DNA of 64,000 nucleotides from Setoptus koraiensis (GCA_048013815.1 CM106585.1:4464001-4528000), one strand, 5' to 3'. Positions 5,316 through 64,000 are shown, numbered from the stretch's first letter. Numbers and translations are program-made. Notes: a model not told the origin generated them from the sequence alone.

Positions 5316-6316
5316 TTTACTGGACTGTGGACTGGACAAAATTGTCGCCATACTGCAAACATTCTGCTCATTCAAGCTCATGGATATCGTGTGTGACTTT
5401 GTTACGTAACACCTGAACAGTATCATGTGACAGTTTTTGGATGCAATGTGCTCTAAATGCTAATTAATTCATGTGTCCGACGATTCGAAACTAATTATCA
5501 AACTCGTTCGTTACCCCGAACTGATCTATCTGAGCTTGAAACGATTGCTGATCGCCCCAAACTGCTCGCGCGGACGTTGGTGATTTTTGATGATTTCTTG
5601 CGGATTCTTAAGTAAGACACACGTTTTAGGGATTATCTATCTGCTTATTGTTTGAACTTGAATTTTCTTGCCGGACAACGGAGGTCAAGTGCGGATAAAC
5701 ACTGGCCGGTGTGAATTGTTTGTGGACTCTGGATTATTTCTTTGGCCAACTAAAGCGCCGATGCGATGATTTTGTTGCATTCGAATTGGCACTTTTGCAG
5801 CATTTTTTCAAGTTCGAAGCGGCCAGCACGCATGCGCACCAATTTAAACCGGTAGGTTGAGCATGCGCGCTGTCGTTTGCAGAACTGGCAAACTGAAATA
5901 TAGAAAGCGTGCTTGAGGAAAAAACCATTAGAGGTCGCTTGTTGATTGCAGGGCCGTGGCCCATTGAAACAGCAGAACCGTAAAGGCTAATTGTAACCAT
6001 ATTTTCCTCAATATAAATATATTAATATCTACTGCAGCCAACACGGCACAAGGCCCCGATCGAAGCGCCCTCCATCAGAGCGGCACGTCACTGGCAGGAA
6101 CATAGTGACTTACTTCGGTTTTTATCATCAGACCATTGCGTCAATTTGTGCGGGCCCGCTGCAACATTTAAACCGCAACTGTACTGTTTACAAGCAACTC
6201 GTTATACATTGCAACAATCGGACCAAGCACGTTACATGGAAACGAGGACAATACATTTGCAAACCATACATTTGCAACACAAAAAAAAACAAACAAATAA
6301 ATAGATCTCAATAAAA

Positions 6317-20147: not shown

Positions 20148-20197
20148 ATGCGAGCCGCGGACAGCCGAGCCGCGGACAGCCGAGCCGCGGACAGCCG
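20148..20197. repeat. 15-nt tandem repeat CGAGCCGCGGACAGC x3
   Basis: Read directly. Confidence 0.85.
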
Positions 20198-20685
20198 AGA
20201 AGCGCCGCGAACTGCTCGCTGAGAACTGCTCGGCAAGAAGCACCGCGAACTGCTCGGCGAGAAGCAGCGAGAAGCACGCCGAGAGGGAGAAGAAAGAACA
20301 GATATAAAGTCGCGCATTGTGGCTGTTGATTCTGCTGAGTGGTCGGTCGTGAATGGCCGACCGGCGGCAGCGGCAAGTGGCGGCTTATCTCATCCGCTGC
20401 GAGCCATCTATCCGCGGCATCCATGGCAGCCGTGAACCGGCCGTCGGCTCGCCAGCGGAGATGCGCAACGCGATAAGCCGACCAACGTAACGAATATATT
20501 ATGGAAATGCACACATTATATAATGATAATATAATAATGTAATGGCCATACATTGCGCAACCATGGCGCGAATATTGCGCGAATGTTTCGTGGATATTGC
20601 GTGGATATTGGGTGGATATTGCGCAAATGTTGGGTGCGAGAAAATATCGGCAACTCGTCACTTGCCCGATGGCCGCTTGTGGCTG

Positions 20686-20711
20686 GCGTTCGAACTTCGA
20701 AGTTCGAACGC
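20686..20711. repeat. Perfect 26-bp palindrome GCGTTCGAACTTCGAAGTTCGAACGC
   Basis: The sequence equals its own reverse complement and contains three TTCGAA units. Confidence 0.95.
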
Positions 20712-22302
20712 ATCGACAGCTCGCCGAATGCCGGCGTTCGAACGCCAGACGCAAGCCGGCGCGATTGTGCGTTCTCGACACGGATGGCAGCCTCACCGAG
20801 CGACCACTCGAGCCGCGCCGTGAGCCGGTCAGGCAACACTGACCAGGCCGCTGCCCGTGAGCTGCCAGCACTGACCAGTGACACATCGCAAGGCCCGAGT
20901 GCGGCCTGCGGGCCGACGGGCATGCAACATGCAAATGAGATTAGACAACTGCAAAATTGCACTTGTCCGATTGACAAGTGCAATTTCGCGTTGCGTTTGC
21001 CAATTGTGTACCAATTGTACGAATTGTACGAATTGTACGAATTGTGCCACTTGTGTCAGTTGTGCCACTTGTGCCACTCGGACACCACTGAGAGCGTCGT
21101 GTGCTGGCACAACAAAAGATTACGACGCACAGAAATTATCGGCCCATTATCATTTATAAAACCAGTGCACGGTGCACCGGCAGTGCACCTGGTCACGCTG
21201 CTCGTGAGGCTGCACCGACTGCTGGCCCAGCAGCCTGCAGCGGCTGTCAGCCGCTGCATGCTGCATCATTTTCGCTGCAGCGGCCGCCGCTGCCTGGCAA
21301 CAAGCATGCTCCACAACTTTCGCCTCACGCTGTATCTCTGGGCGTGTGCCTTTCCCCTCCTGGTGCGCATGCACCATGCCGTAAGTGGTGCAGCATCTGT
21401 GAGTGCGCTAAGTGTGCTGCTTGCGTCGCTTGCGTTGTTTGTGTTGCCCACACAAAATGGTACACACTGTAAGACGCTTGCTGCATTGCAGCAGTGCTTG
21501 CAGCGCTGGTGCACAGCAGCACTGGCGGCGGACACGGCGCGCAGCGCCAGCAGCAGTCGATGGCAACCGTCTGAGCCGACTGCACATATTGCGTTACGCA
21601 CTTCACTAAATATCCCTTGTCGTCGATAATTAATAATTAATCGTCGCTAATATTCGTATCACACCAATCCCAGTTCAGTGAATTTGTTTCGTTATTTGTT
21701 AGAAATAGTATAAAGCGATCGGATAACATTTACATTGTTAGCAACATTCAGTATTTATTGTCATGCCAGCTGAATTGCAGCCCGTGTAAGCGCACTCTCA
21801 CAAGAGCGACTAGGCATTGCGACAAATCTCGGCCAAAACAAGCATATGCTCGCTCGACATTGGCGGCCGCAATATAATTGTCGACAATCGCAATTGCAAC
21901 AACAACTCGCTTGCAAATGCCAAATGAAAAACAATGCTCATCGAGTCGCAAAAAACAGCAACATCACCAGAGCAACAAGCGCCAGTCGTGACATTGGATT
22001 TGTGATATCTCATCGGCAGCATTATTACAGACACACACGTACATTATTATTACTATGACTATTACTCATCAGTTTGCACAATCGCCAGCAACAAGTCACT
22101 GTGCCTAACCCTATCGACACGGCAAGCAATCACGGCAAACAATCACTGCAAGCATCTCTCGTTACTCGCATCGCCAGATCGACACCAATTCAGACAAAGC
22201 AACCGCTAATTGGCCACCACCTATTTGCCTATTCGTCACTACGTTTACTAATCACCACTAATTGCCTATTACTAATTAACCATCACAACTCAGCCATCAG
22301 CC

Positions 22303-41410: not shown

Positions 41411-43463
41411 CCCATGCATCATGCGCTGGCATGTTTCAGATGTCATTGGACAGAGAGTGAGTGGCGTCATTAGCCACCAGACAAGCAAGCGAAACAGCAG
41501 AGAGTTGCAATACGACATGACACCAACAAGAAATGTTTGTTTTGTATTTGTGTTTTTTGCGCGACACAACACAGTCAGTAGAGAGACATGTCCAGTGATC
41601 GAAGAAAGTAGTCGCAGTTTGTAGTAGCAGATTGTTACATCATTATCCATCATTATCATCATCTGTCATTGGCGGCATCGTTGTCGTCGGCATTTCATTC
41701 AGTCAAGTTGCTGTCAGTGGACACATTCCATTAAGCATCATAATTAAAACATAATTAAACGAATAATGGACGTCATTAAATTAGAATTGTGCAAGTGTTA
41801 GTGTGACATTTTTAGCCAGCTCACGAGTGCAAAAACAGGAAAACAAAGCAGGCAACGCAATAACAAGACGACGCGACAAACGGCCCATTGATCATTACGC
41901 AATTGTACAAGAATTGTGGCATGTTGAATGAGGCGACCCTATGACAGTGGCAACAACAGTGTTATAGTTTTAGTAACAGTGAATTATCTGTTATCAGTGT
42001 GACGGTGGCCGGCTTGTTGGCCAGCGATACGGTGTGACGACAGCACTAGCAACAACAGCAACTGTCAGATTGTTCAGTTTCGGTTGCCATCTATGTTGTG
42101 CGGCGATACAAACAAGCCGATTCGAAAGCCGATACTCACTAGATAAGAGAGAGAGCAAATTTACAATAGCGAGCGCCGTTTGAGAACAAAACACTCCATG
42201 TGAATGTGTGAACGGGGTAGATAATTAGCCGGCTCGCCAGCAGTAACTCGATAGCGGCTCGGCCGTTCCGATTAACGCTTCCACAAGAAGCAAACACATG
42301 AAAATATCCAGCTCATTTGATACTGGATACTGCCCACGAAGATACGACACACTCAAGCCAGCCACACACAGCTGACCACACGATCGCCAGTATCTCACAC
42401 CAGTGCACTGTGACAGCCCACTAATGGTCACTATCACCTTGTCACCTACAAACAGGCAACAATAACAACAATAACAACACAAGTGCACAAGAGAGAAACC
42501 TCGTTGGAACTCCGATAACTCGCTTATTCGATTGGCCGATTATTCGTTTATGCGCCAGTGTCCAGCAGCAATAGCAGCAGCAGAGAAGAAGCGGCTCAAC
42601 AAGCTCAACAGCAACAAGTGTCCCTCGAAATCATAACTTCCCACACACACTAAACCGCATAAACCGCATATGTCACTTGTGTCACTTGCATCGCTTGTAT
42701 CACTTGAGTCGCTTGTGTCGCTTGTATCGCGGATTGGCAGATTAGCCCATTAGCAGCGTGAAAGGCTCATCGTCAACGACCAAAACCAAAAGAATCGGCG
42801 AGATTGTTCTTTTCCGTGGCGAACACTCTCTTGTGTCGAGTGCTGACAAAACATGGAAAACCAGAACTAGAACTAGAGTCAAGTGACAAGTTGCAGCAAC
42901 AACTGACCACTCACAACTCATCGCCCGACACAATTTTGCGCCACCTGTAAGAGCGTATCAATCGTCGTCAGTTGACTGTCGACAAGACTGACACAATTGC
43001 CAAGACACTTGTGAAAGCTTCTGCTGGCTGTCATTGCCTAGATAGCGAATAGCAAGCAGCGAGCAGCAAATTGAATAGCAAAGACACAGACAAAAGACAA
43101 ACAAACACCACACATTGCATAATATTGCATCGCAAGTGACATGATAAGCTGCGGCTAGTATCACCAATCATCACTGTTGGCCACTGTGGTGGCGCAAAGC
43201 GGCGACCATGATGATAATTATGCTAATAGCGATCATACAAATAATGACAACAACGTCACCAGCAACAGTCAACGGTTGAACCAGCAACGCATATATCACC
43301 ATATCCAAGCCACTTTGCAGCAGATAAACAGCTACACACAGCACTAGCATAGATAGACAGCCAGCAACAGAGAGAGAGATAAATAAATAAGAGAGCCATG
43401 AAAGAAGAAAGGCAACGCGCCAGACGCGGCTTAATTGGCAAATGGGGCCAATTAAACCAAACA

Positions 43464-46400
43464 ATGCCGCGTCATGCCACCCAATCTAGCTCGCACCGAT
43501 TGGGCCCGTTCACCAAGACAACAACCGTTTTAATAGCAAAACAGTTATTAATTGTTAAACTGTTAATAATATCTCAAGTTATAAGATGTGATACTAGTCA
43601 ACAACAACAACAACAGCACTCGCTTTTGAATCAAGCACCATCACAACTATTGCAACAACAGCAACACCATACGCACGCAAACAAGCTCAGAACGACGGCT
43701 CGTCAATTGATTAAGACCACCAGCAATTATCTGCACAACAACGCCAATTTCGCCAACAATCTCGACAATAATGTAAGTATCAATCAATTGTATCCAAAGA
43801 TACACTAAATTCACTGAATCAAAACAAAACAAATCAATTCAATTTACGCTTCCATCCTGTCGTGCTCAACAACGTGCCAGAACACCGCCGCAAGCACACT
43901 TGCAATCACAAACTCAATCAATAGGCTTCACAGAGATACCAATGTTCCTAATGCCTCATATAAACAGCATCCTCTGGGGCCAAAATCATCCCATAAATCG
44001 AGCAGGCAAGATCAGGCCAACTCAACTGGTCGCAACTGGCTGCAACAACAACCAAAAACACACAATCTCAGTATCAATAACAGTAGATCACAGTCGCATC
44101 ACATAAGCGACCTGCTGAATAAAAATAATAATGTTAGGCGACAAAATTTCACTTCCAGCTACCACGTTAATCCTATTAATAATAACAATAATAATAGTAT
44201 TAGTAGACATCAATCGCAAACGACGACCATTTCGGGCAAACGAAACAAAAGCAAGAATAGCAGCAGCAGCAGTAGTAATTTGAACGATGTTCTACAGGCG
44301 GCCGCAAGCAATTACATTGTGGCCACTTTAGATGGTAAATCTGTCAATTTAAATCCGCCATATGAAACAATGTCAAAGGAACACCAACAACAACACTATC
44401 ATCATTATTATCCGAACAACAATGCCAATAATCGTCAACATAATCGTAACAGCAACAACAGCAATTATAACAATCAATTCTCCGATACTACAGACGTAGA
44501 TATAATTGGTGTTAATACTAACCAAGACGCAACAACAATGCATCAAAACAATATTGACTATACCAATAACAACAATTACGGGCCCAACACACATGCCAAT
44601 TTAACTGGGGCCAATAATTTAGATTACATCACTAATGAATCATCACAGCCAGGTTCAAGTGATCAACAGGTTAGCTCTTCAGATAATAGATTAGACTATG
44701 AGATAATAGGTGACGCCGATGAGCCGCATCAAGTGTCCCCTGACACGCTCAATCAGCAACACAATGCAACTTATGGCGGCAACAACAACAGCAACAATAT
44801 GAGACAGTTTAAATCTATTTATCATGATGCAGTTGACACGACAGTGAGTGACAGCAGCCCATTCGAGCAACATAACAACAATAATAGATATTTCAACAAC
44901 AACAACCACTCTCAGTCAATGCCGAACAACCGTCCAGTGTATCCTGTTTTAGTTAGACAACAGAGACAATATCCCATGAACGGTCAACAACAAGCTCACT
45001 CTAATTATTTTCAGATGAACAATTCAAATAACAATTTCAGACAGCAGCAGCAGCAATATGATCGCGATCATGACAATCAACAACAGAATAGCTATCTAAG
45101 TGAGGCCACAGTGTACAACAACAATGATCACACGGACAAACTAATTGACAATTTTTTAAATCGGGAACATAATCCAAGTCACATGCAAGCAACTGGCAGC
45201 ACTGGCAGCAATGCTTCCCAGTTACATCAGACCGTCCAGCCAGAGCCAGATCAGTCAGGCTACCAGGAGCAAACGGTTCGCTTGATAGAGGAAGAGGACA
45301 ACGCCGGCGGAGTGGACAATCAAAATGTATATCAGTCGGCAGTGGGTCAAAACAACAGCGAGCAGCAACTACTGCAAAATGACGACAACAACAACAAGTC
45401 ACTGGACAGAGTCGAGAAGGACAGCGAGGCGTCGGACAACGACGATCAGTCGTCCGAGCAACAAATGGCCAGGCCAACAGTGGGCGATTTACCGCCGGCT
45501 CCCCAATTGCCTATTCAATACGATTCGGAGATTCACATGCCGCCAGAGGGTTATTATGATGATTATTTTAAGCCAAAAACTGGCATCAACAATGTCACCT
45601 ATGACAATCAACAGGCAAACAATTTAATGAGATTAGACACGGCCGATAATAACAAACTGTTGGGCGCCAACAACAACAACAGTGCCACAAATACAATAAC
45701 AGCTGACTCGCAAACAACCAACATAACTGGAGGCAACGGATGGTTGACATTTTTCAACAATAACGACACCGGCTCAAGCTTGCCAATTGACAACATCACA
45801 ACCGATCGTGTTGTTGCAAACAAGTTGCTTGGCCGCGACGATTCCGCAACAGGTAACAACAATGTTGTTTTATCGGCGCACCAGCAGCAACAGCAGAAAT
45901 CGTCGTCATCTATTGATGATGCCAGTTCTAGTGATCAATTTAGGAATCATCGTTACAGCAATTTACGAGCCATGGACAGTAGCAATCAACAGCAACAGCA
46001 ACAACATCAGCAACGACAACAACAAATCAACAGCAACAACATTAAGCACATGAATGGTCAATTGGACGGTCACAATGGGGCCTCAATTGTTGACCATCAG
46101 CCACCGGCCAACAGCGGGGACAAAGATAGAGCCTCAATAATGTATAACGGCTATCAGGCCGTTCAACCAAAGATGGAGTATTATCAGAATCACGCAAAAA
46201 TGGTGGCAATGTCAGCCGTTGATCAGCATTACCAAAATCAATTGAATAATCAGCCTATAATGGAGCAGCAGCAGCAGCAACAACAAAACGACAACCAATC
46301 ACCATATGGCACCACCAATTGGCTCGAGTCTGCAAAAAAGAATCATAATAGGCGCAACAACAACAAACAGGCTCAGCGCCCATTGGCCAGCTCGGATTAT

Positions 46401-49400
46401 TCATCATTGCCGGCTCATTTGAGTGGCAACAACAACAACAACAACAGCCAGAGGGGCCGAGCAACAACAAACATCGAGCTCATAAATGACGAAGGACCGC
46501 TGATATTCGGTCTGAAGGGCGCCAACAACAACAACAACTCACCTGACAAATACAATTACAACACCGACAATGATAGTGATAATAAATCGGCGGATAGCAG
46601 CGCCAACGACGACAGCGACACCTCGGACAATGCTGGAAACAACAGTGACAATATTGAAATACAAACGAGCTCGACTAAACACATTCAAGACGCCAATGAT
46701 TGGAACAAAACCCATGGCCAAACAGCAATGGGCAATAATGAATCAAATAACGGCAACTATGAATACAATAATGCAAGGCGTCAGTCAAACGGCAACAAAT
46801 CCGTAATAGACTATGATGGAACTGGCTATAGGCGACCCACGAATAAATTGTCGCCAGCGGGCAACAATCGTCACAATTCAACCACTACGAGACGACCATT
46901 GAATGGCGAGCAATCACTGAAAAATCTTGTCTTGTCTCATCCGACTGTCGAACCGCAACCCAGTTCGCCTGTGGACACAATCAGAAAATTGAGAGAAATG
47001 AAGCCACAACCTGACAGAAATGAGCTCATGAACGAATTATTGACCGCTCTGGACAGAGTCAAGGTGGCCATTTACAAATTGCAGCCACTGACAGCAAAAG
47101 TGAACGCCATCTACAGGAAATCGGTGTCCTCTAACACACGCGACGTAGTTATGGACAATCATAAGGGCACCTACGCCAAGAGATATCCGCCCGGCCACTA
47201 CGACGACACCTATGACCGGTTGCATCCTAGCGAAAAACTGGCCACCGGCGACTCGGTGCCAAACGCCGTCTACGTGCCCGCTCCCAAGGACGTTGTAAAT
47301 GCTTATTACAGCGACAATAAAAATAAGCTATCAGCCAATTCGACAGCCGGCACGACAGCAGACGGCAATTCCAACAGCGTGCTGAGGACCGGCAATTTGG
47401 AGATTCATGCCAGCGAATCGAGTGATCACATTCCCACAATAGTGGCCACGGGAGTTGGTAGGCGCCTAGAAAACGGACAGGTGATGGGCGAGCTAGAGGT
47501 GACAGGCGAGCCTAGCGCGGCAAAAACTAACAACAGTCGGTCCACCGATGACAGCAACAATTCGGCGGCGCCCGATTTTGTGCCGGAGGCGCAACTGAAC
47601 GACAACGAGCCTCTGTTCGGTTACAGGATAACTATATTTCAATCGCCCGATGACTATCAAGTGCCAAAAGTCAGCGATACCACCGATTCTCGGCAGACAG
47701 ACGCCGGCGACGAGTGGCCCGACGAGTACGGACTGCAGCGTAGCGGCTACCAAACAACAGCGACCGACAACTCAGCGCCGTCAGATGGCGACGAGTCGGG
47801 ATATCTGGAGCGCAGATCGGACGCAACAGCGGTCGACGCCGGGCCAGAAGACGACGATTACATGACCACCAGCGAATCCACCATTATGGAACACGAGATA
47901 CAGGCGGACGCTAGCGAAGTGAAGAAAAAATATCATGGAGGCGGCAAAAGCGAAGAGCACGAATCCGGCGAGTCGTCCGGTGGCAAAAAGGAGGCCAAGA
48001 AAGAGGGCAAAATGAAAAAAAGCGAAGAGAAGGGCAAGAAGCATCATGCAGAAACGAAGAAAAAGAAAGAGTACAAAAAGATAAAACAACAGAAGGGCAT
48101 CATGAAGAAAGAGAAAAAGACAATGCATCGCGACAAGCATGTGGCGGCCCACGACAAGGGGGTGGCCAAGGAGAAGGCCCTGAAAGAGCGGACACAAATT
48201 GAATTTTTCGAACGAGAACAAATAGTGGATGACGAGCACGAAAAGGGTCAAAAGTCCCTGGTGAAGGCGGGCTGGCAAACTGGCGCCGAATCAAAGAAAG
48301 CCATGAAATTTAGTGCCAACAAGCCGGAAACTTATGTGCACGAAGACGGCAAGGAAGGAAAGGACGGATCTATGATGAAGAAGCATTCGCATTATGAAAA
48401 GGACCACGAAAACAAGATGAACAAGGCCAATTTGCACTCGAGCAACAAGTACGAAAAGAAAAACATGGAGAAAAAGGGCAAAAAGTTCAAAGGTTGGCGA
48501 GAAAAGGGCTACAAGATCATTACGGAAACGGAATTCATCGACAGGGGTCAGTATAATAAGTTTAGCTCATGTTTGATTTCGCTCGAGATTTTGCTTGTGG
48601 ATGATATTTTGTCTATGTGAATGTAATTTGTGATTAACTCTCTCTCTCTCTCTCACCCGTTGATTCTTTTCCGCTCTACTAAAACTTTTGTCGTCGCCAG
48701 GTTCATTGCACGATTCGGCCTACAAAAAGAGAGACAAGGGCGCAGCTGAGCATATGATACACAAGAAACAGGAGGCGAGCTCCGAGGGACACCACGGAAC
48801 ATTGATGGAAATGTCGAAGAAAAAGTCGGGCAAACATTCTAAAAAGTCTGACTCTAAGGAGCACGGTTCCAAGAAACACAAGGAATCGATGAAGAAAAAG
48901 AAGAAACACAAGAAGAAAAAGAAGAAGAAAGAATTCGAGAAGGACTTCGAAAATGATCACGACCACGAGGAATCGATAATGGCCGCAACTGTCACACCAA
49001 GAGGAAATAGTGACATGAACGCTTACTCGAATGAGACCGCTTACGAGACCACTCTCAGGCCGATTTATTCTAACAACAATCAGTCTACAACTCTGAACAG
49101 ACTATTATCGGGTGGCCACGATGAAAAGGTGTTTAATTTTACAAGTGATAATACGGGCAACAATTTGCAGCGACGCAACAATACTAGCGGCAGTTATAAT
49201 CGCGGGGGCGTAGATAATAAATATGTAGCCAGCAATGTGAGTGTCAGTTTTAGCGGTCATGTCAGGCCCAATCAACAGCCTGTGTTGAGTGAACAAAACA
49301 AATCCATTTTGTCTAGTCTGCAGGCCATTTTAGCCAAGCAAAACTCCGACATTGATATTGTTGACAATTCAACTGGCAAGCATGTTAATAAGACAAAACT

Positions 49401-50694
49401 GGGCATATATAAACTAGAGGATAGTCATGTTGTTAAATTGGCTAATGTCGCTAATCAACATGCAAACATCTCTAGCAACAACGGAGCACACAATGGAGCA
49501 GCTACTCAATCAGCATCATTTCATAACGGCCATGAGCTCGGAACCGGCACAATTAGCACCACCACTACCAGGCATCCAACTAGTATTGATCACTACAATC
49601 AACAAAAAACTCATTCTCATTTGCATGACGCTAGCTCAACCACCTCAACAAGTACCACATCAACAACGGCGATGCCCCTTCTCAACACAGAGATAATTCC
49701 GATGAGAGATTCTCATTTGAATTCGCAGCAAAGAATAAACGCGAGGGCCATCACTCATAATAATGGCAACAACAACAATCAGGATAACAACAAGCAGCAA
49801 CAGGTTGTTGTTCAGACAAAACATGACCATGCTGCTATTAGAAATCAGCCGCAACAAACGCAACAGTCAAACGTTGTTAGAATGAACGACAAGGGTGGCC
49901 CACCTCAGACGGATAATCCTGTTATGTTGAGCCAAAATCAGCATAATCAGCAGCAGCAGCAGATTGCAAACAGCCAGCAGCAGCAATTGGGTAGAGGTTT
50001 GCAGTCAATAGTGCATAGGCCACCACCGCCGACACTGAAACCGACGGAACCCTCTCACTCTGATAATTTTATCAACAATATGAAAGTGGCCGACACAAAT
50101 AACAAAGGCTTGCCAGCGAACCTTCCGATCGGCCAGTTGTCTTCCATGTTCGAGCAACACAATACAATTCCACATTTTCACCACCAATCGATATTGCCTG
50201 CGTTGCCTCACCACCAATTCAACGATCAAACTCAACAGACACATTTTTTGACGCATCCGAACGAAATAGTTGCCCCAATCAATAGATTAAACAACAACAA
50301 TAACAACAATTATCTGTCAAGATCGCCGCCAACTCAAATCAACAACCAACAACAGTATGCGCAACAGCAGTTACAACAACAGCACAATGTCGACAACGAT
50401 ATTAATCGTCCTGAGATAGTTAATCAACAAAATCCACATCAGCTTGGCTCTGCCATTAGAAACAATCCGAGCGAATCGCAATTGTTTGCTCAATTGAACG
50501 ACCAATTGGTGCATCATCAGGCATCGTCTATCCAGCATAACATTGAGACTCCATTTGGCAAATCCATGCCAGTGCGACCTTTCTCTCAGATTGCTCCTGT
50601 TATTCACGAATCACATTTACCATTGATTGATTATGATCAAGATCATTCTCCTGTTTTCCCTTCCTCTGGTTATTACATTTCTGATGCCATGTAA
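43464..50694 (+). CDS. Very large (~2,322 aa) N/Q-rich low-complexity protein with a K/E/H/G-rich central domain, putatively secreted; exons 43464-43772, 43881-48546, 48701-50694
   Basis: Three open frames join in phase through introns AAT|GTAAGT..GTGCCAG (108 nt) and G|GTCAGT..CGCCAG (154 nt). I read 43881-44280 and found no stops in frame with the 44280 ORF. Weak N-terminal hydrophobic segment VLIAKQLLIVKLLIISQVIRC. The start codon is uncertain (43398 or 43464). Confidence 0.75.
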
Positions 50695-51339
50695 ATAATT
50701 ATAGTAACAAAAACAATAGTAATAATAGTTTAATATATGAAAATTCCAACTCTCTCTATGCTCGTTATGTCATGTAACGACGACAACAAACGACTCATTC
50801 TCTTATGCATCAGTAACACTTCCTCATTACTTTTGAACGTGCTTACTATATCCGTTTGCGCCATAATGCAATTAATCAAAATCTGCCCTATGGCATCTTC
50901 TCTACGGGAACCGATCCGAAACATCGACCAGGCGCTGCCGTCGGTGATTCTGTCTTGGAGTTGAGCGCCATCATTTGTTCACTTGTCCTCTGATGGTCGG
51001 ATATTTTGCTCAGGATGTTTCCTCACAAGAAACCCTCAATAAGTCTATTTCATTGAGTCGAGATCAGACAACGTCTGTTCCAATTCAGCGACGAGGAGAA
51101 CAATGTGCCACAAGATGATAAAGAATTGATACACCAAGTGCTGATACCCACGAGGGATGTTAATATGTATCTAATTAATAGCCCGAATATGAGGCTATAC
51201 GGATTATTACGCGAGCAAAAATGTTTCGCGGGCTAGGCAATCAATTAATGCTTAACTACAAGCATCTCCCTGTTGCCTACCATAGACGTGCCCCGTCCTT
51301 ATGGTATCAGGGGCGCCGATCGCCAGACCATCCGGTCAC

Positions 51340-53018: not shown

Positions 53019-53902
53019 CCAGCTTGGCTCGCCGCAGTCCCAACGCAAGGCCTGCAATACAAAACCTTACCTGTTGGAATATGACAAGTGGATAGTTATT
53101 TGTATAATGTACTTCTCGATATGTCTATTGAAGCGGTTACGTAATATTTCAAAAGACTTGTACTTTTATAGGCAGTTAGTTTTGATTTCAGGTACTTGCT
53201 TGGTGCTTGGTGTACGGCCAGTGTACCGATGTGGTGCGCACAGGCATTGTAAGTGGCACAGATACGAGCACAGATGCAGCCGAACAGCTGACGGGATTTT
53301 TCGGAGCCACAAATCAGACGGCCTTGATGAGATTGTGTTTCTTGGCAGCACACATAGGGCGCGTTGTCAAAATTAAAATGTAAAACTAGATGAACTTGAC
53401 TGTCATAAGATACAAAACAAGCAACCTATACAGTGCAGTGCGGATGTTAAGTAATGAATCACTTGCACCGAGTACAAGGTGCAATCAGACTATTGTTTAA
53501 ATTTCCACACTGTCCACGCTGCACAGAGTTGTTGTTGTGCGTGTTGAAAGTGTGCGCACACCAACAACTCTGCTGGCAGAGATTCTGGGTATTGTACAGT
53601 TCAATAATTTACACTTTGCACAACAATCACACTGGGCTCAACAACGAAATTGCACCAAATCAAACTGCACAAACGTGACTTTTTGGTCGTCGTATGTGTG
53701 CAAAAAGTCGCACAGCAATGTGCCACAAGGTCCGTAGTGTAGCCAGTAGTTCACAGTAGTGTTGTAATAACACATGATACTCTGCTAGTATAGCAGCAGT
53801 AAATAAAAGAGGATAGGATTCAACAATGATATTTTTCACTCGAGTATACACAAGTACTTCTACAACAAAATAAAATATCATTTGGACAACAACTATTAGA
53901 TA

Positions 53903-55097
53903 ATGAATTATTATATTGGAAAGATAAAAGATTTTTATAATGAAATTAATTCTGCAACTCTGACTGGTGCCATAGATGTTATAGTAGTTAAACAACCAGA
54001 TGGCACCTGTACATGTTCGCCCTTTCATGTTAGGTTTGGCAAATTAGGGGTCCTCAGGAGCAAAGAGAAAATTGTCGATATTGAAATAGATGGACAACCA
54101 GTTGATGACATACACATGAAATTGGGCGACAATGGCGAGGCTATATTTGTCAGACTTAATTCAGAACAATTGACAAGTTTAAATCTCAAGCCTGGCTCAA
54201 ATGAAGTTGTCTTCAGTGTTACAACACAATATCAGGGCACAACTAAATGCATGTGCATCATATATCTATGGAATTATGACGATAAGATAATTGTATCAGA
54301 TATTGATGGTACTATAACTAAGTCAGACGTCCTAGGTCATTTATTACCATATGTAGGAAAAGATTGGGCTCAATCAGGTGTGGCGCCATTGTTTACTAAA
54401 ATATTTGATAACGGATATAAATTTCTATATTTATCAGCACGCGCAATAGGCCAGTCCCAGACAACACGTGATTATCTTAAAAGTGTCAAACAGGACGACA
54501 TTAGGCTGCCAGATGGTCCATTATTATTATCGCCAACATCTTTGTTATCAGCATTCCACCGAGAAGTGATTGAAAAGAAACCAGAGATCTTTAAGATAAG
54601 CTGCTTGAAAGATATCAAAAAACTCTTTCCGTCGAATCCATTTTTTGCCGGCTTTGGTAACAAAATCAATGATGTTTGGGCCTATAGAGCTGTCGATATT
54701 CCAATTATGAGAACCTTCACTATAAATCATCACGGAGTTTTGAGGCTAGAACTACCACACACGTTTCAATCATCGTAAGTATCACACAGCAATGTTACAC
54801 ACCTGTTATCAATCCATACATCACAAACATCACACAGTGGCTAACAAAGATTGTCATCTATACAATTTTTTGATTTATATCCATTTCAGGTACACCTACC
54901 TAAGTGACGTTGTGGATCAAATGTTTCCACCTCTTAATTCAAATTACTCAAAATCATTCACCAATGATAGTGAGTTTAGTCAATTTACATATTGGCGCGA
55001 ACCCCTGCCTGAGCTTGAAGTAGACGAGCTTATCCTAAAAGCTTGCCAAAACAAAGGCAAACAGAAAAAGCATAATAGTCCATCGAAGTCGAAATGA
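53903..55097 (+). CDS. Lpin: Lipin / phosphatidate phosphatase, minimal 359-aa form; exons 53903-54774 and 54890-55097
   Basis: N-LIP ([50 protein letters not shown]) immediately followed by C-LIP ([21 protein letters not shown] catalytic motif at residue 133, [15 protein letters not shown]) and the conserved YWREPL motif. 115-nt phase-2 intron TC|GTAAGT..TTTCAG. Confidence 0.95.
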
Positions 55098-58282: not shown

Positions 58283-61200
58283 TCAGGCTGGCCAAACGTC
58301 CGCCAATCGTGTCCTCTTATGTAATGGTTGACCAACTAAATGATTACTATTGTGGTCATGATTATGTTGATTAGTGGCAACTTGTTGATAGGCAGCCATA
58401 TCACCAGAGGCAACTATCAAGTTGCCGCCGCCCAACGAACTACCTGGCGAGGTGGGTGTAGATGATGAGGATAATGGCATTAACAAATGACCATTGGCCG
58501 GAGACACATGACCAGAGTGGCTAGAATTTGAAGAGGGTGGCCTCTGTAGATGTGTTTGGATATGTGATGATTGTTCTAGTTTAATATTGATATTGTTATT
58601 ATTATTATTGGTGTTATTGTTGTTGGTGGTGTTTCTATTGTTGTTATTTGACGAATTGTGAGTGGAATTTTGTTGTTGTTGTTGCGCAAGCATCGCCACT
58701 TGCTGCTGATGATGATGATTCAGAGATGAATTAGTAGCAATCGGAGGTGTCACCGTGGCGGCCAACGTTGTCTGCTGAGGCGAAGGAGTTGAATGATTAC
58801 TATGCGAACTGGGGTGAGTCATGGGTGAAATGGGCCCTCCTGTCAGAGATCTGCGAGAGTTGGTTGAGTGAATTGTTGCAAATTGTGCGAATTGTGCAAA
58901 TTGTGGAACAGAACAAGAGAGATAAATCAGTCAGATTATCAATAGATCAGTGACGAGTTGTCAGTGGATCAGTTGCGAGCTGTCGGTGGAACAGTTATCA
59001 GCGGATCAATTATGAGTAGATCATCATTTATCAATGGATCTTGCGGCATTTGGGGCGCGCGTGTTCCGCCGCGTCACATCATCGCGCTGGCTAGCCACCT
59101 GGCCGTCAGGTGGCGCCAAAACAGGCGAGACGGCAGTAATTGTGTAAGTGTGTGTGTGTGTGTGCGTGTGTGAGAGAGAGAGAGAGACCGTTGCATTCTA
59201 TCATCGGTTTATCTCTCTCAATCTCTTTCTTTAGACTTTTCGCTCTTTCTCTGTCTACATCATGATGGCTTAGTTTCGCTTGTTTGTTATTTGTATTCTA
59301 TCGCTAGCGCTTTTTCTTTTCTCTCTCTCTCTCTGTTCTGGCTTCTCGGCTTCTCTCTCTCTCTTTCTCTCGGCTTCTTTCCAGCGCTCGGCTTCTTTCC
59401 AGCGCTCGGCTTCTCTCGAGCGCTCGGCTCTCTCGAGCGCTCGGCTAGTCGCTGGCACGGCTCGCTTCTTTGGCTTGCCTCGTCGTGGTCGCAGTCGTCT
59501 TAGCATGTTGACTCCATCATGTTATTTAAGCTGTTTTCCAAAATTAGGTCAGGCCATACATCTACCTGTTGCTCGTTTCTATTGCTGCCATTGCCGCCGT
59601 TAACCAGTTTTAGTTGTTGCTGTTGTTGGCGTTGCTGTTGTTGGCGTTGCTGCTGTTGTTGTTGCTGTTGTTGTGCCGTTGTAGCTGTTGCTGGTCAGGA
59701 GCAGCGGCAGTAAATTACATAGATAGAATTGTTGCACTGAGAGAGAGTAGAAGCGAATTCTCTAAAGACAAAATCAAAATCAACTTCTTCTTCTTCTTTT
59801 GCTATTCCACTTATAATGTAGTTGTTGTTGTTGCTTAATACGGGGATAGTAATTTCTCTCTCGCTCCCTCATTCTTTCCACCTCTCCAACGCTTCTCTCG
59901 GCTCTCGCACACTCTGATAGAAGACACACACACACACTCTTTTGGAATACGAAGACACACACACACACACTCTGTTGAACAGAGTCTGTTGGAATACCAA
60001 GACACACACACTATATATATATAATAGAAGAATGTTGCACTTGTTGTTGTTGGCTGTTGTTAGCCCAACAACGAAAGCTGGCTAAAAAAAGTGTGTCAGG
60101 TGTATGCACTTGCTAATCTAGCCAGTTTTGGACACACAACAGCGACACAACCGAAGCATACACAGCATCTTGCCACCACTCTTACCTGGCCAGAGATTAA
60201 ATAACTGGCGCTGGCTCTGGCGCCGGCAATAGGCCATGGTCCGCAAGCCGGCGAGCTTCGCCGTCGAGCTAGCTCGCCGGCCGGCCTGCCGACTGAATGG
60301 CTGGCTCGACGGCAAAGTGTGTTGGACATACAACACAAACAAACTTGAATTGACTTGGAGAGCAACAACAGCGAACGAGGACGAAGAAAGTCTGATTATC
60401 TCTCGCTCGCTCGCTCGCTCTGTGTGTCTCTCTCATTATCATGGCAAGATCGCTGCGCTGTGTGCCGTGCCGTGTGGAATCTAATGCAAGTCGCGGCCAG
60501 ATAATCGTGAGAGAGCAAAAAGAAGCAACAGGTTGCCGCTTTCGCCCGGCCGCTCGGCCGGCTCGGTGCTCGGTTGCTCGGCTGTGCGCCGGCCGCTCGG
60601 GCTCGCGAGCTCAACTTGGAAATTGTATCTTTGTCCTCGATTTAGCTCCGCTGCAAAGCCGGCCAAATCGGCCCCATCCATGGCCAACAGTGCGCGGCTG
60701 TCGCTGCTGCTTGCAACAACGGCAACAACAGCGGCAACAACGGCAACAACGGCATCAGCGGCAACAACGGCAACTGCCGGCGCCGCCGCCGCCGCCGCGA
60801 AGAAAGCAAAGTCAAGAGGAGACAAAAATGAAAGAGAAACTACCACTGCTATTACTAACCTTCCATGAATGGATTGATGATGAGATAGTACCAAGCTATT
60901 GTGCTGCCAATTGTTGTTGTTGTTGTTGTTGCTGGCGCCGTTATTAACGGCAAGGGCCGTGCTCAGGTCGGCCGTATTAAAAGCCACAGCTTCCGCCTGA
61001 AACGGCTCGCCTGTTTATAACCGGCCGAGTCGTTTTTATTTTCATTATCCGCCGTTGTCCGTCGCCGTCGTCGTCGTCGTCGTTGTTGTTGTTTGCCAAT
61101 TGGCAATTGCAAGTTATTCCAGGTTGTTGGTTGTTCCATTCCACGGCATTATCCGCCGTTATAGTTTATTATTGTGTCAGTTTTGGGTAGATGCCGTCGC

Positions 61201-62299
61201 AAGCGGCAAGACAGGCGCCAATGGTGGCAATGGCGGCAAAAAGTGGCAGCGATTCGTTTCGTTTCGTTTTTAGCGGAATGGTTCCAACGGTTCGTTGTTG
61301 GTTGCCGGTTGCGGTGGTTGGCGGCGTCGTCGTCGTCGTTGTTTCGGTTGTCGTTGTTTCAGTTGTTGCGCAAATTGGTTCAATTACGTCGCCATTCCAT
61401 CAATGCGACACACACACACACACACCGTTGCAAGATTGTCGTAGCACCGTTATAAGTCGCACAAAATCGACGGTGCAGTGCGGTGCAGCAGCGGTGCGGT
61501 GCAGCAGGTAGTGTGGTGCAGCAGGTAGTGTGGTGCAGGGGTGTGGGTATAGTGAGAGACAAAACAAGAGATTGCTGTAGAGGGGCATTTTTATAACATT
61601 AAGACAGAGAGAGAGAGAGAGAGTAGCCGCTGGCTCATTCGGCCGGCCAACAGCTCATTTAGCCGGAGTTATTACAACCGCGGTTTCAGTGCCACTGGCT
61701 CATTCATGCAACATGAATCATGTTGCGTAACCGTTTGTTTGTGTGTGTGTGTGTTGCGCAATCTTACCTGAGCTGTTGTTTGTGTTGTAGAGGGCAGTGG
61801 CGTAGCCATTGCCAAAGCCATTGCCATTGGCCATTGATAATGCGCTCATGTTGGGCATTGCGCCGACACCAATGGCGCCACCGACGACGCCGTTATTATT
61901 GGCCTGATTGTTTAATAACTGCTGCTGCTGTTGTTGTTGTTGCTGCTGCTGTTGTTGTTGTTGTCGTTGACTAGCCACCTGCTGCTGTTGGCCGGTACCC
62001 GCGCCCGTCTGAAACGTCGACGGGGGCGTCACCGATGTGGGAGTGGACTTATTTGAGGACATGCTGCTAGATGAGGCAGCAGAGGAGACGGACGATGGTG
62101 GTGGCGATCGCAATAAATGTGACGCTTTGTTGTTGTTATTGGTGGGTTGTAGTTGTTGCTGCTGCTGCTGTGCCTCGAGCGCCGTCAGCGGCACGGGCGA
62201 CACGGATCCGGGACCCTTGCCCAGGTTGTTGTTGGCGTCCATGCCCAGGGGTACCGACAGCGCCAATGTGGTCGACTGGTCAACATTGGACTGTAGAGC
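58283..62299 (-). CDS. Mef2: Myocyte enhancer factor 2, 3' exons only (approx. 62299-61768, 61010-60860, 58850-58283); MADS/MEF2 domain lies beyond the window
   Basis: Motifs matching recalled MEF2 C-terminal landmarks: TTLALSVPLG (cf. xLPVSVPV), NGNGFGNGY (cf. GNGYGN), FNTADL (cf. LNSADL), NIKLE (cf. NIKSE) and terminal PLHKRTRLADVWPA (cf. KRMRLSEGWAT / KRPRISGGWGT). Splice phases are consistent (1 then 2); the 61010 acceptor has a poor pyrimidine tract. Confidence 0.75.
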
Positions 62300-63635
62300 C
62301 TGATGGTGGGGCAACGTTGCGGGGCATTAATAACGTGGGGGCACGAATAACGGGGTACAAAAAAGTTACAATAGGTTAGTTGGTGGTGGTGGGAGACAAG
62401 TTGCTTTGAATGCGCTGGCGACGGAAGCGGCAGCTTCCAGGGCGCAGGATAGATGGCGACGCTGGGCCCGAAGGGCACGGCCGGCACGTGTTGCGGGCCG
62501 TGCGACCGCTCGTCTCGTGCGGCATCCGCGTCTCGTGCGGCATCCGCGTCTTGTGTGCAACTCGTCCAGTTGTGCGCTCGCGCGACACAACTGAACGGCG
62601 TTCGAACGCTTCGAATGCTTCGAACGCTTCGAACGCTCCGAAGCAACAGGCTGCTTGTGGGAGAATGGGCCGCTCGTCGATTGTTCGCCGTTCGCCGGCC
62701 GTTCGCCGGGCCTCCGAAGGAACGAATTCTCAAGAAGAAGAATCGACAGTTGCGAATGGACGGCGCCGAATTGGGTCACACAACGGTGATGCTGTCACAG
62801 TGATGCAATTCCTTTGGCGTTTGTTGTTGGCGTTGCTGTTATATCATCACTGTTAGCGCAACAGTGATTGTGTTGCCGCATTGTGGGCCCACACAATGGG
62901 CGCACTACAAAAAGATGAATGGACGGCGGCTCGCAGCTGGCGCCCGGTCGCAGCCGGACGCCCGTCGCACCGGCGACCAACTTGTCCCGTTGTGCGCTCC
63001 TTCAGCCTCTGTCTCTGCTCGGCCCGCTTCCTTCGGCTCCTCTGCTTCCTTCGCTTCTCTGGCCTCTCGTGCTCGGCTCGCTTCTCTGGCCTCTTGTGCT
63101 CGGCTCGCCTCTCTCTCTCGCCTCTCGCTTCCCCCCAATCGGGAGCTTCCCCCAATCTGGAGCTTCCCCCGAACCTGAAACCGCTCGGCGCGCCGCTCGG
63201 GCCAGTGGTGGGCGCAGCGGCTGTGACACAACACCGGCACCTTGTGCGGCCGACTCAAGGTGCTGCCGCTGCTGCTAATCTGAGACCGCCACCAGCGCCG
63301 ACACTCGCGCGAATATGCCCGGCGCACCGGACGTGAATTGGCGGCGCGTTAAAATTGGGTCAACTTTCGTCGGCGCGGCCCACGGCCACGGCCAAGGAAT
63401 CGCCGTTGCGCGCACATGTAACCAATGTAACATGTACATTTCGTGTGCGTTACCGTATTACCTGGCGGCTTATTATCATGCATCGTAATATATTATTATA
63501 TATTATTGGCTGCCTTGTGATTGGCTGACTGGCTGCGGCGCAACAATTGCGACACTGCCGCAAAACACTGCAAAACACTCCGAGACGCCGCTGGATACCG
63601 CTGGATACTGCTGAATACTGCAGGATACTGCCAGC

Positions 63636-63684
63636 CAATGCCAGCCAATGCCAGCCAATGCCAGCCAATGCCAGCCAATGCCAA
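63636..63684. repeat. 10-nt tandem repeat GCCAATGCCA x~5
   Basis: Read directly; it produces the spurious WLALAGIGWH ORFs. Confidence 0.9.
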
Positions 63685-64000
63685 CGCCGCCCGACACCGC
63701 CAGAAACTGCCAGAAACTGCGAACGCCGCGCCGATACTCATGAGGCGAACGAGACAAACGGTTTCGATTGCCGGTCGGCGGCTCGCGAACGCCAATGTCA
63801 TTCGGATTTAAATTGCGCAAACAACTATTTAATTTTGTGACATGGCCGCAGCCAGTCAGCTGGCTCTGGCGTGCCGTCGGGCAGCGATACCTATCATTGG
63901 TGTTGGCGCGATCTGCAGCGCTCTGGAAATGGCTCGCTTTTTGGCAAATTATGCCAAAAAGAAAACTGTCAGACTGGCACATTCGCACCTCGTTGCAGCC

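What the first reader, a model, noticed from the sequence alone, without database searches (positions are those of the whole stretch)
53903..55097. Naturally minimal animal lipin: N-LIP fused directly to C-LIP, whole regulatory middle region missing
Seen: the ORF reads ...[13 protein letters not shown]|[12 protein letters not shown]... with no spacer (junction at 54151/54152), giving a 359-aa protein with an intact DIDGT motif and WREPL motif. Established: vertebrate and insect lipins separate these domains by roughly 500 mostly disordered residues. That region carries the mTOR/insulin phosphosites, the polybasic NLS/PA-binding motif and M-LIP, and is controlled through CTDNEP1-NEP1R1 (Nem1-Spo7). 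A natural near-direct fusion is best known from ciliate Pah2. Inference: this is a phospho-switch-free lipin, and the basic C-terminal tail ([14 protein letters not shown]) may replace the lost polybasic motif. The gene keeps a 3' intron at an apparently ancestral position (SS|Y), so it is not a simple processed retrocopy.
Basis: partly seen in the sequence, partly recalled or inferred. Interest (0 to 1): 0.85.

Follow-up and report, generated by a model that had tools for sequence, protein, structure and literature searches.

The report
Linker-less lipin enzyme in a mite
This mite gene encodes a lipin (the enzyme that turns phosphatidic acid into diacylglycerol for fat and membrane synthesis) that has lost the whole regulatory middle region found in other animal lipins. 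The short form is conserved and under strong selection in at least 15 related mites, so it is a natural stripped-down version of a normally heavily regulated enzyme.

Summary
A two-exon gene (53903-54774 and 54890-55097, + strand) encodes a 359-aa lipin. The N-LIP domain runs straight into C-LIP at 54151/54152 (V83|R84), with no linker, polybasic motif or M-Lip domain. All catalytic residues are intact, and the animal-type C-terminal WREPLP motif is kept.

It is not an assembly artefact or a decaying copy:
- Fifteen orthologues of 337-358 aa have the same fusion.
- Against a congener, dN/dS is 0.065. Exons are 96-98% identical, the intron only 61%.
- The AlphaFold model (pLDDT 86) superposes on Tetrahymena Pah2 (TM 0.8).
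- The 3' intron sits at the same site and phase as in two other acariform mites, so the gene is not a retrocopy.

New context:
- Other acariform mites already have short, M-Lip-less linkers (about 70-240 aa).
- One clade member (417 aa) keeps a 72-aa linker remnant.
- The basic C-terminal tail is lineage-specific, so "the tail replaces the polybasic motif" is not supported.

Three points stay untested: whether this is the genome's only lipin, whether it lacks phospho-control, and whether it is transcribed. A clade-trained profile search found no long lipin resembling the clade.

Minimal lipins were previously reported only from ciliates and plants. The scan had not noted this lipin before.

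The parts
53903..54774 (+). Exon 1: codons 1-290 plus the first two bases of codon 291. It holds N-LIP and most of C-LIP/HAD.
   Evidence: ORF listing and sequence; splice reconstruction; 96.5% nucleotide identity to congener L002 against 61-63% in the intron and 5' flank.
53906..53944 (+). N-terminal amphipathic helix (residues 2-14). It is 4 residues shorter than in most orthologues.
   Evidence: AF2 helix H2-14 at low pLDDT, as is usual for this element; length and hydrophobic-moment comparison.
53903..54151 (+). N-LIP region (residues 1-83). It includes G78, the glycine mutated in mouse fld2J.
   Evidence: Pfam Lipin_N 5-86, E 3e-36; G78 invariant in a 121-sequence alignment.
54149..54154 (+). 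Direct N-LIP|C-LIP junction, V83|R84 (54151/54152).
   Evidence: Sequence. Anchor-to-anchor segment is 16 residues here, against 88-89 in P0002 and Oppiella, 260 in P0122, and 448-786 in the other arthropods tabulated. Modelled as strand 79-82, a tight loop, then helix 87-92, at pLDDT about 89.
54152..54774 (+). C-LIP / LNS2 HAD-like catalytic region (exon-1 part, residues 84-290).
   Evidence: Pfam LNS2 83-290, E 1.2e-93; Tt Pah2 match.
54299..54313 (+). Catalytic DxDxT motif (D133-I-D135-G-T137).
   Evidence: Motif search; invariant columns D133, D135, G136, T137.
54775..54889 (+). Phase-2 intron of 115 nt (GTAAGT...TTTCAG) at FQSS|Y.
   Evidence: An intron at the identical site and phase occurs in Oppiella nova L004 and mite locus L007. 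It is absent from the other clade members, which have contiguous ORFs.
54890..55097 (+). Exon 2: last base of codon 291, residues 292-359 and the TGA stop.
   Evidence: 98.1% identical to the congener, in frame.
54993..55010 (+). WREPLP motif (W326-P331), the conserved C-terminal Trp motif of lipin/Pah.
   Evidence: The F.YWR.P motif is also found in 21 of the 25 other lipins compared there. The Trp column is more than 90% conserved.
55050..55094 (+). Lineage-specific basic tail (last 15 residues, net +6) with one S-P-S-K site (S354).
   Evidence: Charge table. The lysine-rich end of the tail is identical in the congener but is not conserved across the clade.

Best explanation
The gene is the orthologue, and probably the only copy, of the animal lipin phosphatidate phosphatase in an intron-poor, compact-genome acariform mite, most likely an eriophyoid-type plant mite. 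In this lineage the intrinsically disordered linker between N-LIP and C-LIP has been deleted completely. That linker normally carries the serine-rich phosphosites, the WxWGxLP motif, the M-Lip dimerisation and membrane-binding domain, and the polybasic NLS/PA-binding motif.

[quoted passage not shown] The animal-type C-terminal WRxPLP motif is also kept.

Inferred mechanism. The protein is a Mg2+-dependent PA phosphatase that binds the ER membrane through its N-terminal helix and core surface. It is probably constitutively membrane-competent, as Tetrahymena Pah2 is in cells. It has no linker-based mTOR/CDK/CTDNEP1 phospho-switch, no nuclear import signal and no M-Lip-mediated dimerisation. Control of flux would then rest on expression level, substrate supply or short lineage-specific tails.

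Shown: the architecture, residue conservation, purifying selection, predicted fold, ancestral intron and distribution in the clade. Inferred: catalytic activity, constitutive localisation, loss of phospho-regulation and sole-copy status.
For: Architecture and catalytic residues:
- D133, D135 and T137 are present.
- D142 matches Tt D155 and K231 matches Tt K244.
- N253, D257 and G78 are present.

Predicted fold:
- The AF2 model of the window's own 291-aa exon-1 product has pLDDT 85.7 and pTM 0.85.
- Its best PDB match is Tt Pah2 7lhk_B: TM 0.82/0.80, rmsd 2.5 A, E 9e-31.
- The full-length orthologue P0004 gives TMt 0.81-0.87 to Tt Pah2.

Selection:
- dN/dS is 0.065 against the congener.
- Exons are 96.5-98.1% identical, against 61% for the intron and 63.5% for the 5' flank.
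- Across the clade, synonymous sites are saturated while dN is only 0.13-0.21.
- Only one clade-specific substitution falls at a position at least 85% conserved elsewhere.

Clade and orthology:
- The clade of 15 short forms plus P0002 is monophyletic (100/99) and sits among chelicerate lipins.
- The intron is shared with Oppiella and L007.
- M-Lip (Pfam Lipin_mid) is present in scorpion and tick lipins. It is absent from P0002, Oppiella, P0122, P0004 and P0014.

No sign of a second lipin:
- A profile trained on the clade scores clade members at 646-739 bits (600 for the truncated P0001). Every protein outside the profile's own training set scores 614 bits or less.
- No long lipin with a clade-like core therefore exists among 5.8 billion proteins, although more than 15 clade genomes are in the collection.
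- No other lipin piece lies in the 64-kb window.

Literature:
- Tt Pah2 and a mouse lipin-2 N-Lip/C-Lip fusion are active PAPs.
- Tt Pah2 is constitutively at the ER in HEK293 cells (PMC7066176).
- Insects and nematodes have one lipin gene (PMC5703613).
Against: - There is no direct expression evidence. Three polyA/oligo-dT RNA runs bearing the label of a related 'organism C' gave no reads on the gene or on the neighbouring housekeeping WD40 gene. The label is probably a host. Only one 266-nt contig, from a run guessed to be RNA, bridges the junction.
- The rest of the genome could not be searched, so a second, canonical lipin is not excluded.
- The residue equivalent to Tt Pah2 R269, part of the Asp-Arg signature (PMC12657724), is Lys254. 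This Lys is shared by all chelicerate lipins examined and by 49 of 121 aligned lipins, so it is not tied to the short form.
- The N-terminal helix is 4 residues shorter than in relatives.
- The tail has one S-P-x-K site, so some phospho-control cannot be excluded.
- Assignment to eriophyoid mites is circumstantial.
Confidence: 0.78

Rival explanations
1. It is a specialised second lipin, as Pah2 is in Tetrahymena or the minimal lipins are in Solanaceae. A canonical, regulated full-length lipin would be encoded elsewhere in the genome and would do the main job.
For: Every previously described minimal lipin coexists with a long paralogue: TtPah1 of 872 aa alongside TtPah2 of 335 aa, and the plant cases. 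The rest of this genome could not be searched.
Against: - The clade-trained profile search found no long lipin with a clade-like core.
- No lipin of 160-509 aa other than the short form and P0002 appeared near the clade.
- The core evolves as slowly as single-copy arthropod lipins, at 70-76% identity to scorpion and insect C-LIP.
- Arthropods usually have one lipin gene.
- The ancestral intron and the position among chelicerate lipins in the tree fit orthology.
- These genomes are strongly streamlined.
Confidence: 0.17
2. It is a non-functional or recently truncated copy (pseudogene, retrocopy or assembly collapse) that merely looks intact.
For: There is no solid RNA evidence. The middle region is entirely missing.
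Against: - dN/dS is 0.065, and exon/intron conservation contrasts sharply.
- The same architecture occurs in 15 independently assembled orthologues spanning saturated synonymous divergence.
- The intron is retained with conserved splice sites.
- All invariant lipin residues are present.
- The fold is predicted confidently.
Confidence: 0.02
3. The protein has been repurposed as a catalytically weak PA-binding or scaffolding protein rather than a bulk PAP. This would resemble the related LNS2 domain of Nir2/PITPNM.
For: Lys replaces the signature Arg (Tt R269). The Nir2 LNS2 domain is the next-best structural match, at TM about 0.6.
Against: The full DxDxT nucleophile/acid pair, D142, K231, N253 and D257 are all kept. 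The Lys variant is shared with canonical chelicerate, hemipteran, mollusc and hemichordate lipins. Sequence identity to Nir2 is only 17-19%.
Confidence: 0.03

Closest known systems
Tetrahymena thermophila Pah2 (PDB 6TZY/6TZZ/7LHK/9D13-16) and the 'minimal lipin/Pah PAPs' of ciliates and Solanaceae (Khayyo et al. 2020, PMC7066176)
   Same: N-LIP is fused directly to C-LIP in a protein of about 335-360 aa. [quoted passage not shown] There is no M-Lip and no NLS. The predicted fold superposes at TM about 0.8 and rmsd 2.5 A.
   Different: - Origin is independent. The mite protein nests among chelicerate lipins, is 70-76% identical to arthropod C-LIP against 34-37% to Tt Pah2, and keeps a mite-specific intron and the animal/yeast WRxPLP motif.
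- The junction is 12 residues shorter than in Tt Pah2, and the model shows no betaE' strand.
- Lys replaces Tt R269.
- Tt Pah2 coexists with the 872-aa Pah1. Here no long partner was detected.
Canonical metazoan lipins (mammalian lipin 1-3, Drosophila Lipin, and scorpion, tick and insect LPIN of 850-1100 aa)
   Same: [quoted passage not shown] The fld2J glycine, an LGHLL sequence at the LxxIL site, and the C-terminal F.YWR.PLP motif are kept.
   Different: The 450-790-residue linker is missing. With it go the serine-rich phosphosites, the WxWGxLP motif, M-Lip (Pfam PF16876) and the polybasic KKRR/KYRK stretch just before C-LIP.
Short-linker lipins of other acariform mites (Oppiella nova 441 aa, Panonychus citri 540 aa, Leptotrombidium deliense 590 aa, Halotydeus destructor 629 aa, and the 417-aa P0002)
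   Same: No M-Lip. The intron is at the same FQSS|Y site (Oppiella, L007). They show the highest overall similarity to the window protein.
   Different: They retain linkers of about 70-240 residues. Oppiella and P0122 keep a polybasic run before C-LIP (KIKYKKK in Oppiella; KKKRKRRHYRK in P0122). P0002 keeps the WxWGxIP motif. The window's clade has 0-3 residues at that place.

Membership tests
Lipin/Pah Mg2+-dependent phosphatidate phosphatase | N-LIP domain (Pfam PF04571) at the N-terminus, with the conserved glycine (mouse G84, fld2J) | tested here: met
   Lipin_N covers 5-86, E 3e-36. G78 is invariant in the 121-sequence alignment.
Lipin/Pah Mg2+-dependent phosphatidate phosphatase | C-LIP/LNS2 HAD-like domain with the catalytic DxDxT motif and the canonical HAD motif III Lys and motif IV Asn/Asp | tested here: met
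   LNS2 covers 83-290, E 1.2e-93. DIDGT is at 133-137; K231, N253 and D257 are invariant columns.
Lipin/Pah Mg2+-dependent phosphatidate phosphatase | Asp-Arg signature for PA recognition (Tt Pah2 D155 and R269; PMC12657724) | tested here: inconclusive
   The Asp is present (D142). The Arg position is Lys254. The paper notes Lys in some uncharacterised PAPs. Here Lys occurs in 49 of 121 lipins, including all chelicerates sampled.
Lipin/Pah Mg2+-dependent phosphatidate phosphatase | Two-domain fold: a split Ig-like domain plus a HAD-like domain | tested here: met
   AF2 gives pLDDT 85.7 and pTM 0.85. Foldseek finds Tt Pah2 at TM 0.75-0.85, E about 1e-30.
Lipin/Pah Mg2+-dependent phosphatidate phosphatase | Mg2+-dependent PA phosphatase activity | not testable with these tools
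   Needs a recombinant enzyme assay or yeast pah1-deletion complementation.
Minimal lipin/Pah (Tt Pah2 type) | N-LIP and C-LIP joined directly, with no extended linker, NLS or M-Lip | tested here: met
   The Pfam domains abut or overlap at residues 83-86. There is no Lipin_mid hit. The junction table gives 16 residues between anchors.
Minimal lipin/Pah (Tt Pah2 type) | Common descent with the ciliate and plant minimal lipins | tested here: not met
   The protein nests among chelicerate lipins. It shares an intron with other mites. It is 34-37% identical to Tt Pah2 against 70-76% to arthropod lipins. The architecture is convergent.
Canonical metazoan lipin | Long disordered linker with phosphosites and a polybasic NLS/PA-binding motif | tested here: not met
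   The linker is absent.
Canonical metazoan lipin | M-Lip domain (Pfam PF16876) | tested here: not met
   There is no hit in the window protein, P0004, P0014, P0002, Oppiella or P0122. Positive controls, scorpion at E 2e-30 and tick at E 3e-9, do hit.
Canonical metazoan lipin | C-terminal Trp motif (WRxPLP, the WRDPLVDID-like motif) | tested here: met
   FTYWREPLP is at 323-331. The Trp column is more than 90% conserved.
Processed retrocopy | No introns at parental positions | tested here: not met
   A phase-2 intron lies at the same codon as in Oppiella nova and L007.

The most novel reading that the evidence does not exclude
This minimal protein is the sole lipin of a whole clade of plant-feeding mites. 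If so, these animals run triglyceride and phospholipid synthesis without any of the lipin control layers thought to be universal in Metazoa: mTOR/CDK phosphorylation of the linker, CTDNEP1-NEP1R1 dephosphorylation, nuclear import and co-regulator function, and M-Lip dimerisation. The 417-aa relative with a linker remnant, and the mite lipins with linkers of about 70-240 aa, would then be living intermediates of that loss. The prediction is co-loss or repurposing of CTDNEP1/NEP1R1 in these genomes.
Probability: 0.55. Interest if true: 0.75.

Novelty: new variant of a known kind. Interest (0 to 1): 0.58.

Why it matters
Lipin regulation is a central theme in lipid metabolism. It covers phosphorylation of the linker by mTORC1 and CDKs, dephosphorylation by CTDNEP1-NEP1R1, nuclear shuttling and M-Lip dimerisation. 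All of these elements lie in the region this animal has deleted.

The only natural linker-less lipins described so far are accessory paralogues in ciliates and some plants (PMC7066176). An independently evolved animal version that is conserved and probably single-copy offers two things:
- a natural test of which lipin functions the core alone can carry in a metazoan;
- a graded series of natural intermediates for dissecting linker function: 0-3, about 70, about 240 and more than 450 linker residues.

It is also a compact, well-behaved animal lipin core for structural work, more than 70% identical to insect and other chelicerate C-LIP. No animal lipin core has been solved; the only hits to solved structures were Tt Pah2 entries. 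Finally, it illustrates how extreme genome streamlining reaches into protein architecture.

Tried and rejected
- RNA evidence. The raw-read runs gave no reads even on the neighbouring WD40 gene. The label is probably a host plant, so the test was uninformative.
- Sample identity. A full-text search for the SRA accessions of the related contigs found nothing.
- Searches for earlier scan notes on a lipin or on CTDNEP1/NEP1R1/TOR in this genome found nothing relevant.
- Single versus repeated loss of the linker. The best tree nests the linker-bearing P0002 among the short forms. The AU test does not reject monophyly of the short forms (p = 0.11), so this is unresolved. Intron and linker states together require homoplasy in at least one of the two characters.
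- The 50%-representative search merged the short clade into long-lipin clusters, so it could not show the clade separately.
- Candidate long paralogues were rejected. P0133 groups with the tick, P0135 with hemipterans, P0136 is unresolved at the base of the arthropods, and P0305 is a transcript-like contig from an unrelated 2015 run.
- The basic-tail-as-polybasic-substitute idea was rejected as a family feature.
- The Pfam 'WRNPLPNID' hit on exon 2 was read as the short lipin WRxPLP motif, not as a separate domain.

Full report
**1. What is in the sequence**

On the + strand an ORF starts at 53903 with MNYYIGK..., the canonical lipin N-terminus. It runs to a stop at 54776-54778. A GTAAGT donor lies after 54774 and a TTTCAG acceptor before 54890. 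Splicing them removes 115 nt in phase 2 and joins ...HTFQS(S) to [14 protein letters not shown].... The result is a 1080-nt CDS of 359 codons plus TGA at 55095-55097.

Pfam places Lipin_N on residues 5-86 (E 3e-36) and LNS2 on 83-290 (E 1.2e-93). The two conserved lipin regions therefore abut with nothing between them.

Against PDB sequences the only hits are Tetrahymena Pah2 entries (E 2e-62). At the junction the mite protein is 12 residues shorter than that already minimal enzyme. No other lipin fragment, linker or M-Lip lies anywhere in the 64-kb window.

The window is animal DNA. It also carries Wnt, ACAD9-like, choline-transporter-like, glycyl-tRNA-synthetase-like and PRP17-type WD40 genes, mostly as long uninterrupted ORFs.

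**2. It is real and under selection**

A word-indexed search of 5.8 billion proteins returned three groups of relatives:
- a 98%-identical copy (P0001);
- fourteen further proteins of 337-358 aa at 73-80% identity over the full query, all with the same direct fusion;
- one 417-aa relative (P0002).

All come only from unannotated Logan assemblies.

Their contigs are compact and intron-poor. Examples are a 1187-aa RPB2 and 600-1000-aa genes as single ORFs with intergenic gaps of 0.1-0.5 kb.

The congener contig L002 is syntenic, with the WD40 gene downstream on the minus strand. Its identity to the window is as follows:

| Segment | Identity |
|---|---|
| Exon 1 | 96.5% |
| Exon 2 | 98.1% |
| Intron | 61% |
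| 5' flank | 63.5% |

Splice sites are conserved. dN/dS is 0.065, with 27 synonymous and 7 non-synonymous differences. Between more distant members, synonymous sites are saturated (pS 0.75-0.94) while dN is only 0.13-0.21.

Only one clade-specific substitution hits a position that is at least 85% conserved in other lipins, and the window itself keeps the ancestral residue there. An assembly collapse, a pseudogene or a retrocopy is therefore excluded.

**3. Fold and catalytic residues**

The window's own exon-1 product (291 aa) was modelled with a 121-sequence alignment. The model has mean pLDDT 85.7 and pTM 0.85. Foldseek's best PDB matches are all Tt Pah2 structures. The top one is 7lhk_B: TM 0.82/0.80, rmsd 2.5 A, E 9e-31. 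The next fold, the Nir2 LNS2 domain, is far behind.

A full-length orthologue (P0004) gave a weaker model (pLDDT 69) with the same top matches, TMt 0.81-0.87.

In the model the junction is strand 79-82 (EAIF), a four-residue loop, then helix 87-92, at pLDDT about 89. In Tt Pah2 the N-Lip/C-Lip transition is the two-residue turn of a betaE-betaE' hairpin (PMC7066176). The mite protein appears to have dispensed with betaE' as well.

Residues present:
- D133, D135 and T137 (DxDxT);
- D142 (Tt D155);
- K231 (Tt K244);
- N253 and D257;
- the fld2J glycine G78;
- the C-terminal WREPLP motif.

The Arg of the Asp-Arg signature (Tt R269; PMC12657724) is Lys254. That Lys is found in all chelicerate lipins sampled and in 49 of 121 aligned lipins, so it is unrelated to the truncation.

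The N-terminal amphipathic helix is predicted (residues 2-14). It is four residues shorter than in most relatives.

**4. Evolutionary setting**

In trees of the conserved core, the 15 short forms plus P0002 form one clade (100/99). It lies in the chelicerate part of the tree with Oppiella, the 609-aa mite lipin P0122, scorpion, horseshoe crab and tick. The best-scoring long lipins are scorpion, horseshoe crab and insects, at 72-76% identity.

The anchor-to-anchor segment across the junction, from the N-LIP G(E/D)xGE motif to the (S/T)EQ(L/I) motif at the start of C-LIP, includes about 16 core residues. Its length forms a series:

| Lipin | Segment between anchors (aa) |
|---|---|
| Scorpion, horseshoe crab, tick, insects | 448-786 |
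| Mite lipin P0122 (609 aa) | 260 |
| Oppiella nova | 89 |
| P0002 | 88 |
| The clade | 15-19 |

Pfam's M-Lip model hits scorpion, tick and a 902-aa metagenomic lipin. It does not hit P0122, Oppiella, P0002 or the short forms. By precomputed Pfam, Halotydeus destructor (629 aa), Leptotrombidium (590 aa) and Panonychus citri (540 aa) also lack M-Lip, whereas Dinothrombium (989 aa) keeps it.

Oppiella and P0122 keep a polybasic run immediately before C-LIP. P0002 keeps the widely conserved WxWGx(L/I/M)P linker motif, so its linker is an ancestral remnant and not an insertion.

The FQSS|Y intron, with the same TCATC|GTAAGT donor and phase 2, is present in Oppiella nova (L004) and in locus L007. 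It is therefore ancestral at least to these acariform mites. P0002 and all other short forms have lost it.

The best tree nests P0002 among the short forms, but monophyly of the short forms is not rejected (AU p = 0.11). Combined with the intron states, either the linker or the intron must have been lost more than once. Parallel intron loss is the cheaper assumption in such genomes.

The organism is probably an eriophyoid-type plant mite:
- the genome notes fall on two pieces;
- the stretch is held by phyllosphere metagenomes and by runs carrying several different organism labels;
- the relatives have extremely compact genomes;
- earlier scan notes reached the same label.

This assignment is inference, not proof.

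**5. Is it the only lipin?**

This is the key open point, and it cannot be settled from one window. Indirect evidence favours a single gene.
- The first search covered 160-509 aa. It found no other lipin type near the clade except P0002, which occurs once, behaving as one lineage's orthologue and not as a clade-wide paralogue.
- A profile built from the clade scored clade members at 646-739 bits (600 for the truncated P0001). Every protein outside the profile's own training set scored 614 bits or less, in generic chelicerate and arthropod order. No long lipin with a clade-like core was found.
- None of 412 fetched lipins longer than 420 aa exceeds 77% identity to the window's C-LIP.
- Insects and nematodes have one lipin gene (PMC5703613).
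- The core evolves no faster than single-copy arthropod lipins.

I put sole-copy status at roughly 0.7-0.75.

**6. Mechanism**

Shown: the protein is a complete lipin catalytic core without a linker. The rest rests on published work and is inferred.
- Tt Pah2 and an engineered mouse lipin-2 N-Lip/C-Lip fusion are active PAPs.
- Tt Pah2 sits constitutively on the ER in HEK293 cells, whereas lipin 1 needs fatty-acid stimulation.
- The linker is where phosphorylation controls localisation and activity.
- M-Lip mediates dimerisation and membrane binding (PMC8342540).

The mite enzyme should therefore be an active PAP that binds membranes through its N-terminal helix and core. It would not use linker phospho-control, nuclear import or M-Lip dimerisation.

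The family does not support this:
- net charge of the last 15 residues is +6 in the window and its congener;
- it is +3 to +4 in four orthologues;
- it is -1 or -2 in ten clade members, including P0002, and six of these end ...LLLLKKNER or ...LLLLKKN;
- it is +1 in P0003.

The tail may still matter locally. It contains the only S-P-x-K site outside the core (S354).

**7. Comparison with what is known, and novelty**

[quoted passage not shown] Full-text searches found no report of such a lipin in mites, arthropods or other animals.

The mite protein works like that class but is not descended from it. It is a convergently minimised animal lipin. It keeps the animal-type C-terminal motif and an ancestral mite intron, is more truncated at the junction than Tt Pah2, and probably has no long partner.

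I rate it a new variant of a known kind. It is a solid and useful finding for lipin biology and for genome-streamlining studies, but not a new kind of system.

**8. Limits**

- Transcription is not shown. One 266-nt contig from a run guessed to be RNA bridges the junction. Several other runs guessed to be RNA hold 5-20% of the gene's words.
- Enzymatic activity, localisation, sole-copy status and the fate of CTDNEP1/NEP1R1 are untested.
- Taxon names of the relatives are unknown.

Noticed in passing
L001 (P0002, ERR10900071), residues ~90-160: A 417-aa member of the short-lipin clade keeps a 72-residue acidic linker containing LYWQWGRIP, which matches the widely conserved WxWGx(L/I/M)P lipin linker motif. 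It has lost the 3' intron. It looks like a living intermediate of the linker deletion.
   Followed up: partly
P0017/L004 (Oppiella nova), P0122/L007, P0304 (Halotydeus destructor), P0454 (Panonychus citri), P0311 (Leptotrombidium), P0312 (Dinothrombium): Several acariform mites have lipins of only 441-629 aa with no M-Lip domain, while Dinothrombium (989 aa) keeps M-Lip. M-Lip loss and linker shortening are therefore widespread, but not universal, in Acariformes.
   Followed up: partly
window 53903-53944; P0003: The N-terminal amphipathic helix is 4 residues shorter (GKI-KDFY versus GKLITNFKEFY) in the window and its congener, and also in P0003, which sits in a different subclade. This looks like a parallel one-turn deletion.
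   Followed up: no
P0031, P0043 (ENA/JGI metagenome proteins, 330 and 343 aa): Further directly fused lipins of unknown eukaryotic origin, 56-60% identical to the window protein over 93% of its length. That is much closer than Tt Pah2. The Atlas look-up points to clusters of about 314-351-aa lipins labelled mostly Streptophyta and diatoms.
   Followed up: partly
window 42000-50700: Two adjacent long + strand ORFs (44280-48620, 1446 aa; 48688-50694, 668 aa) have no Pfam hit at E <= 1e-5. They lie in a stretch with unusually strong AT skew (+0.25 to +0.36).
   Followed up: no
window 1-4000, 16000-22000, 60000-64000: Blocks of 54-59% GC alternate with 30-45% GC elsewhere in the window. The lipin lies in a 38-40% GC stretch.
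   Followed up: no
window ~53527-53575, about 330 nt upstream of the lipin start: A short, near-perfect inverted repeat (cagagttgttg...caacaactctg flanking gtgcg.../...cgcac) sits in the otherwise ORF-free 3-kb upstream region. It may be a small hairpin or a MITE end.
   Followed up: no
runs X27, X30, X31 (label 'organism C'): Deep polyA/oligo-dT RNA runs carrying the same species label as DNA runs that hold 24-64% of the gene's words contain no reads of this 5.9-kb stretch, not even of the WD40 splicing-factor gene. The label is probably that of a host on which the mite occurs.
   Followed up: partly
window 3414-5426 (-): A 670-aa single-ORF Wnt-family gene. The Wnt domain matches in two stretches, the best covering only positions 57-143 of the 305-position profile. 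It may be an unusually long or divergent Wnt.
   Followed up: no
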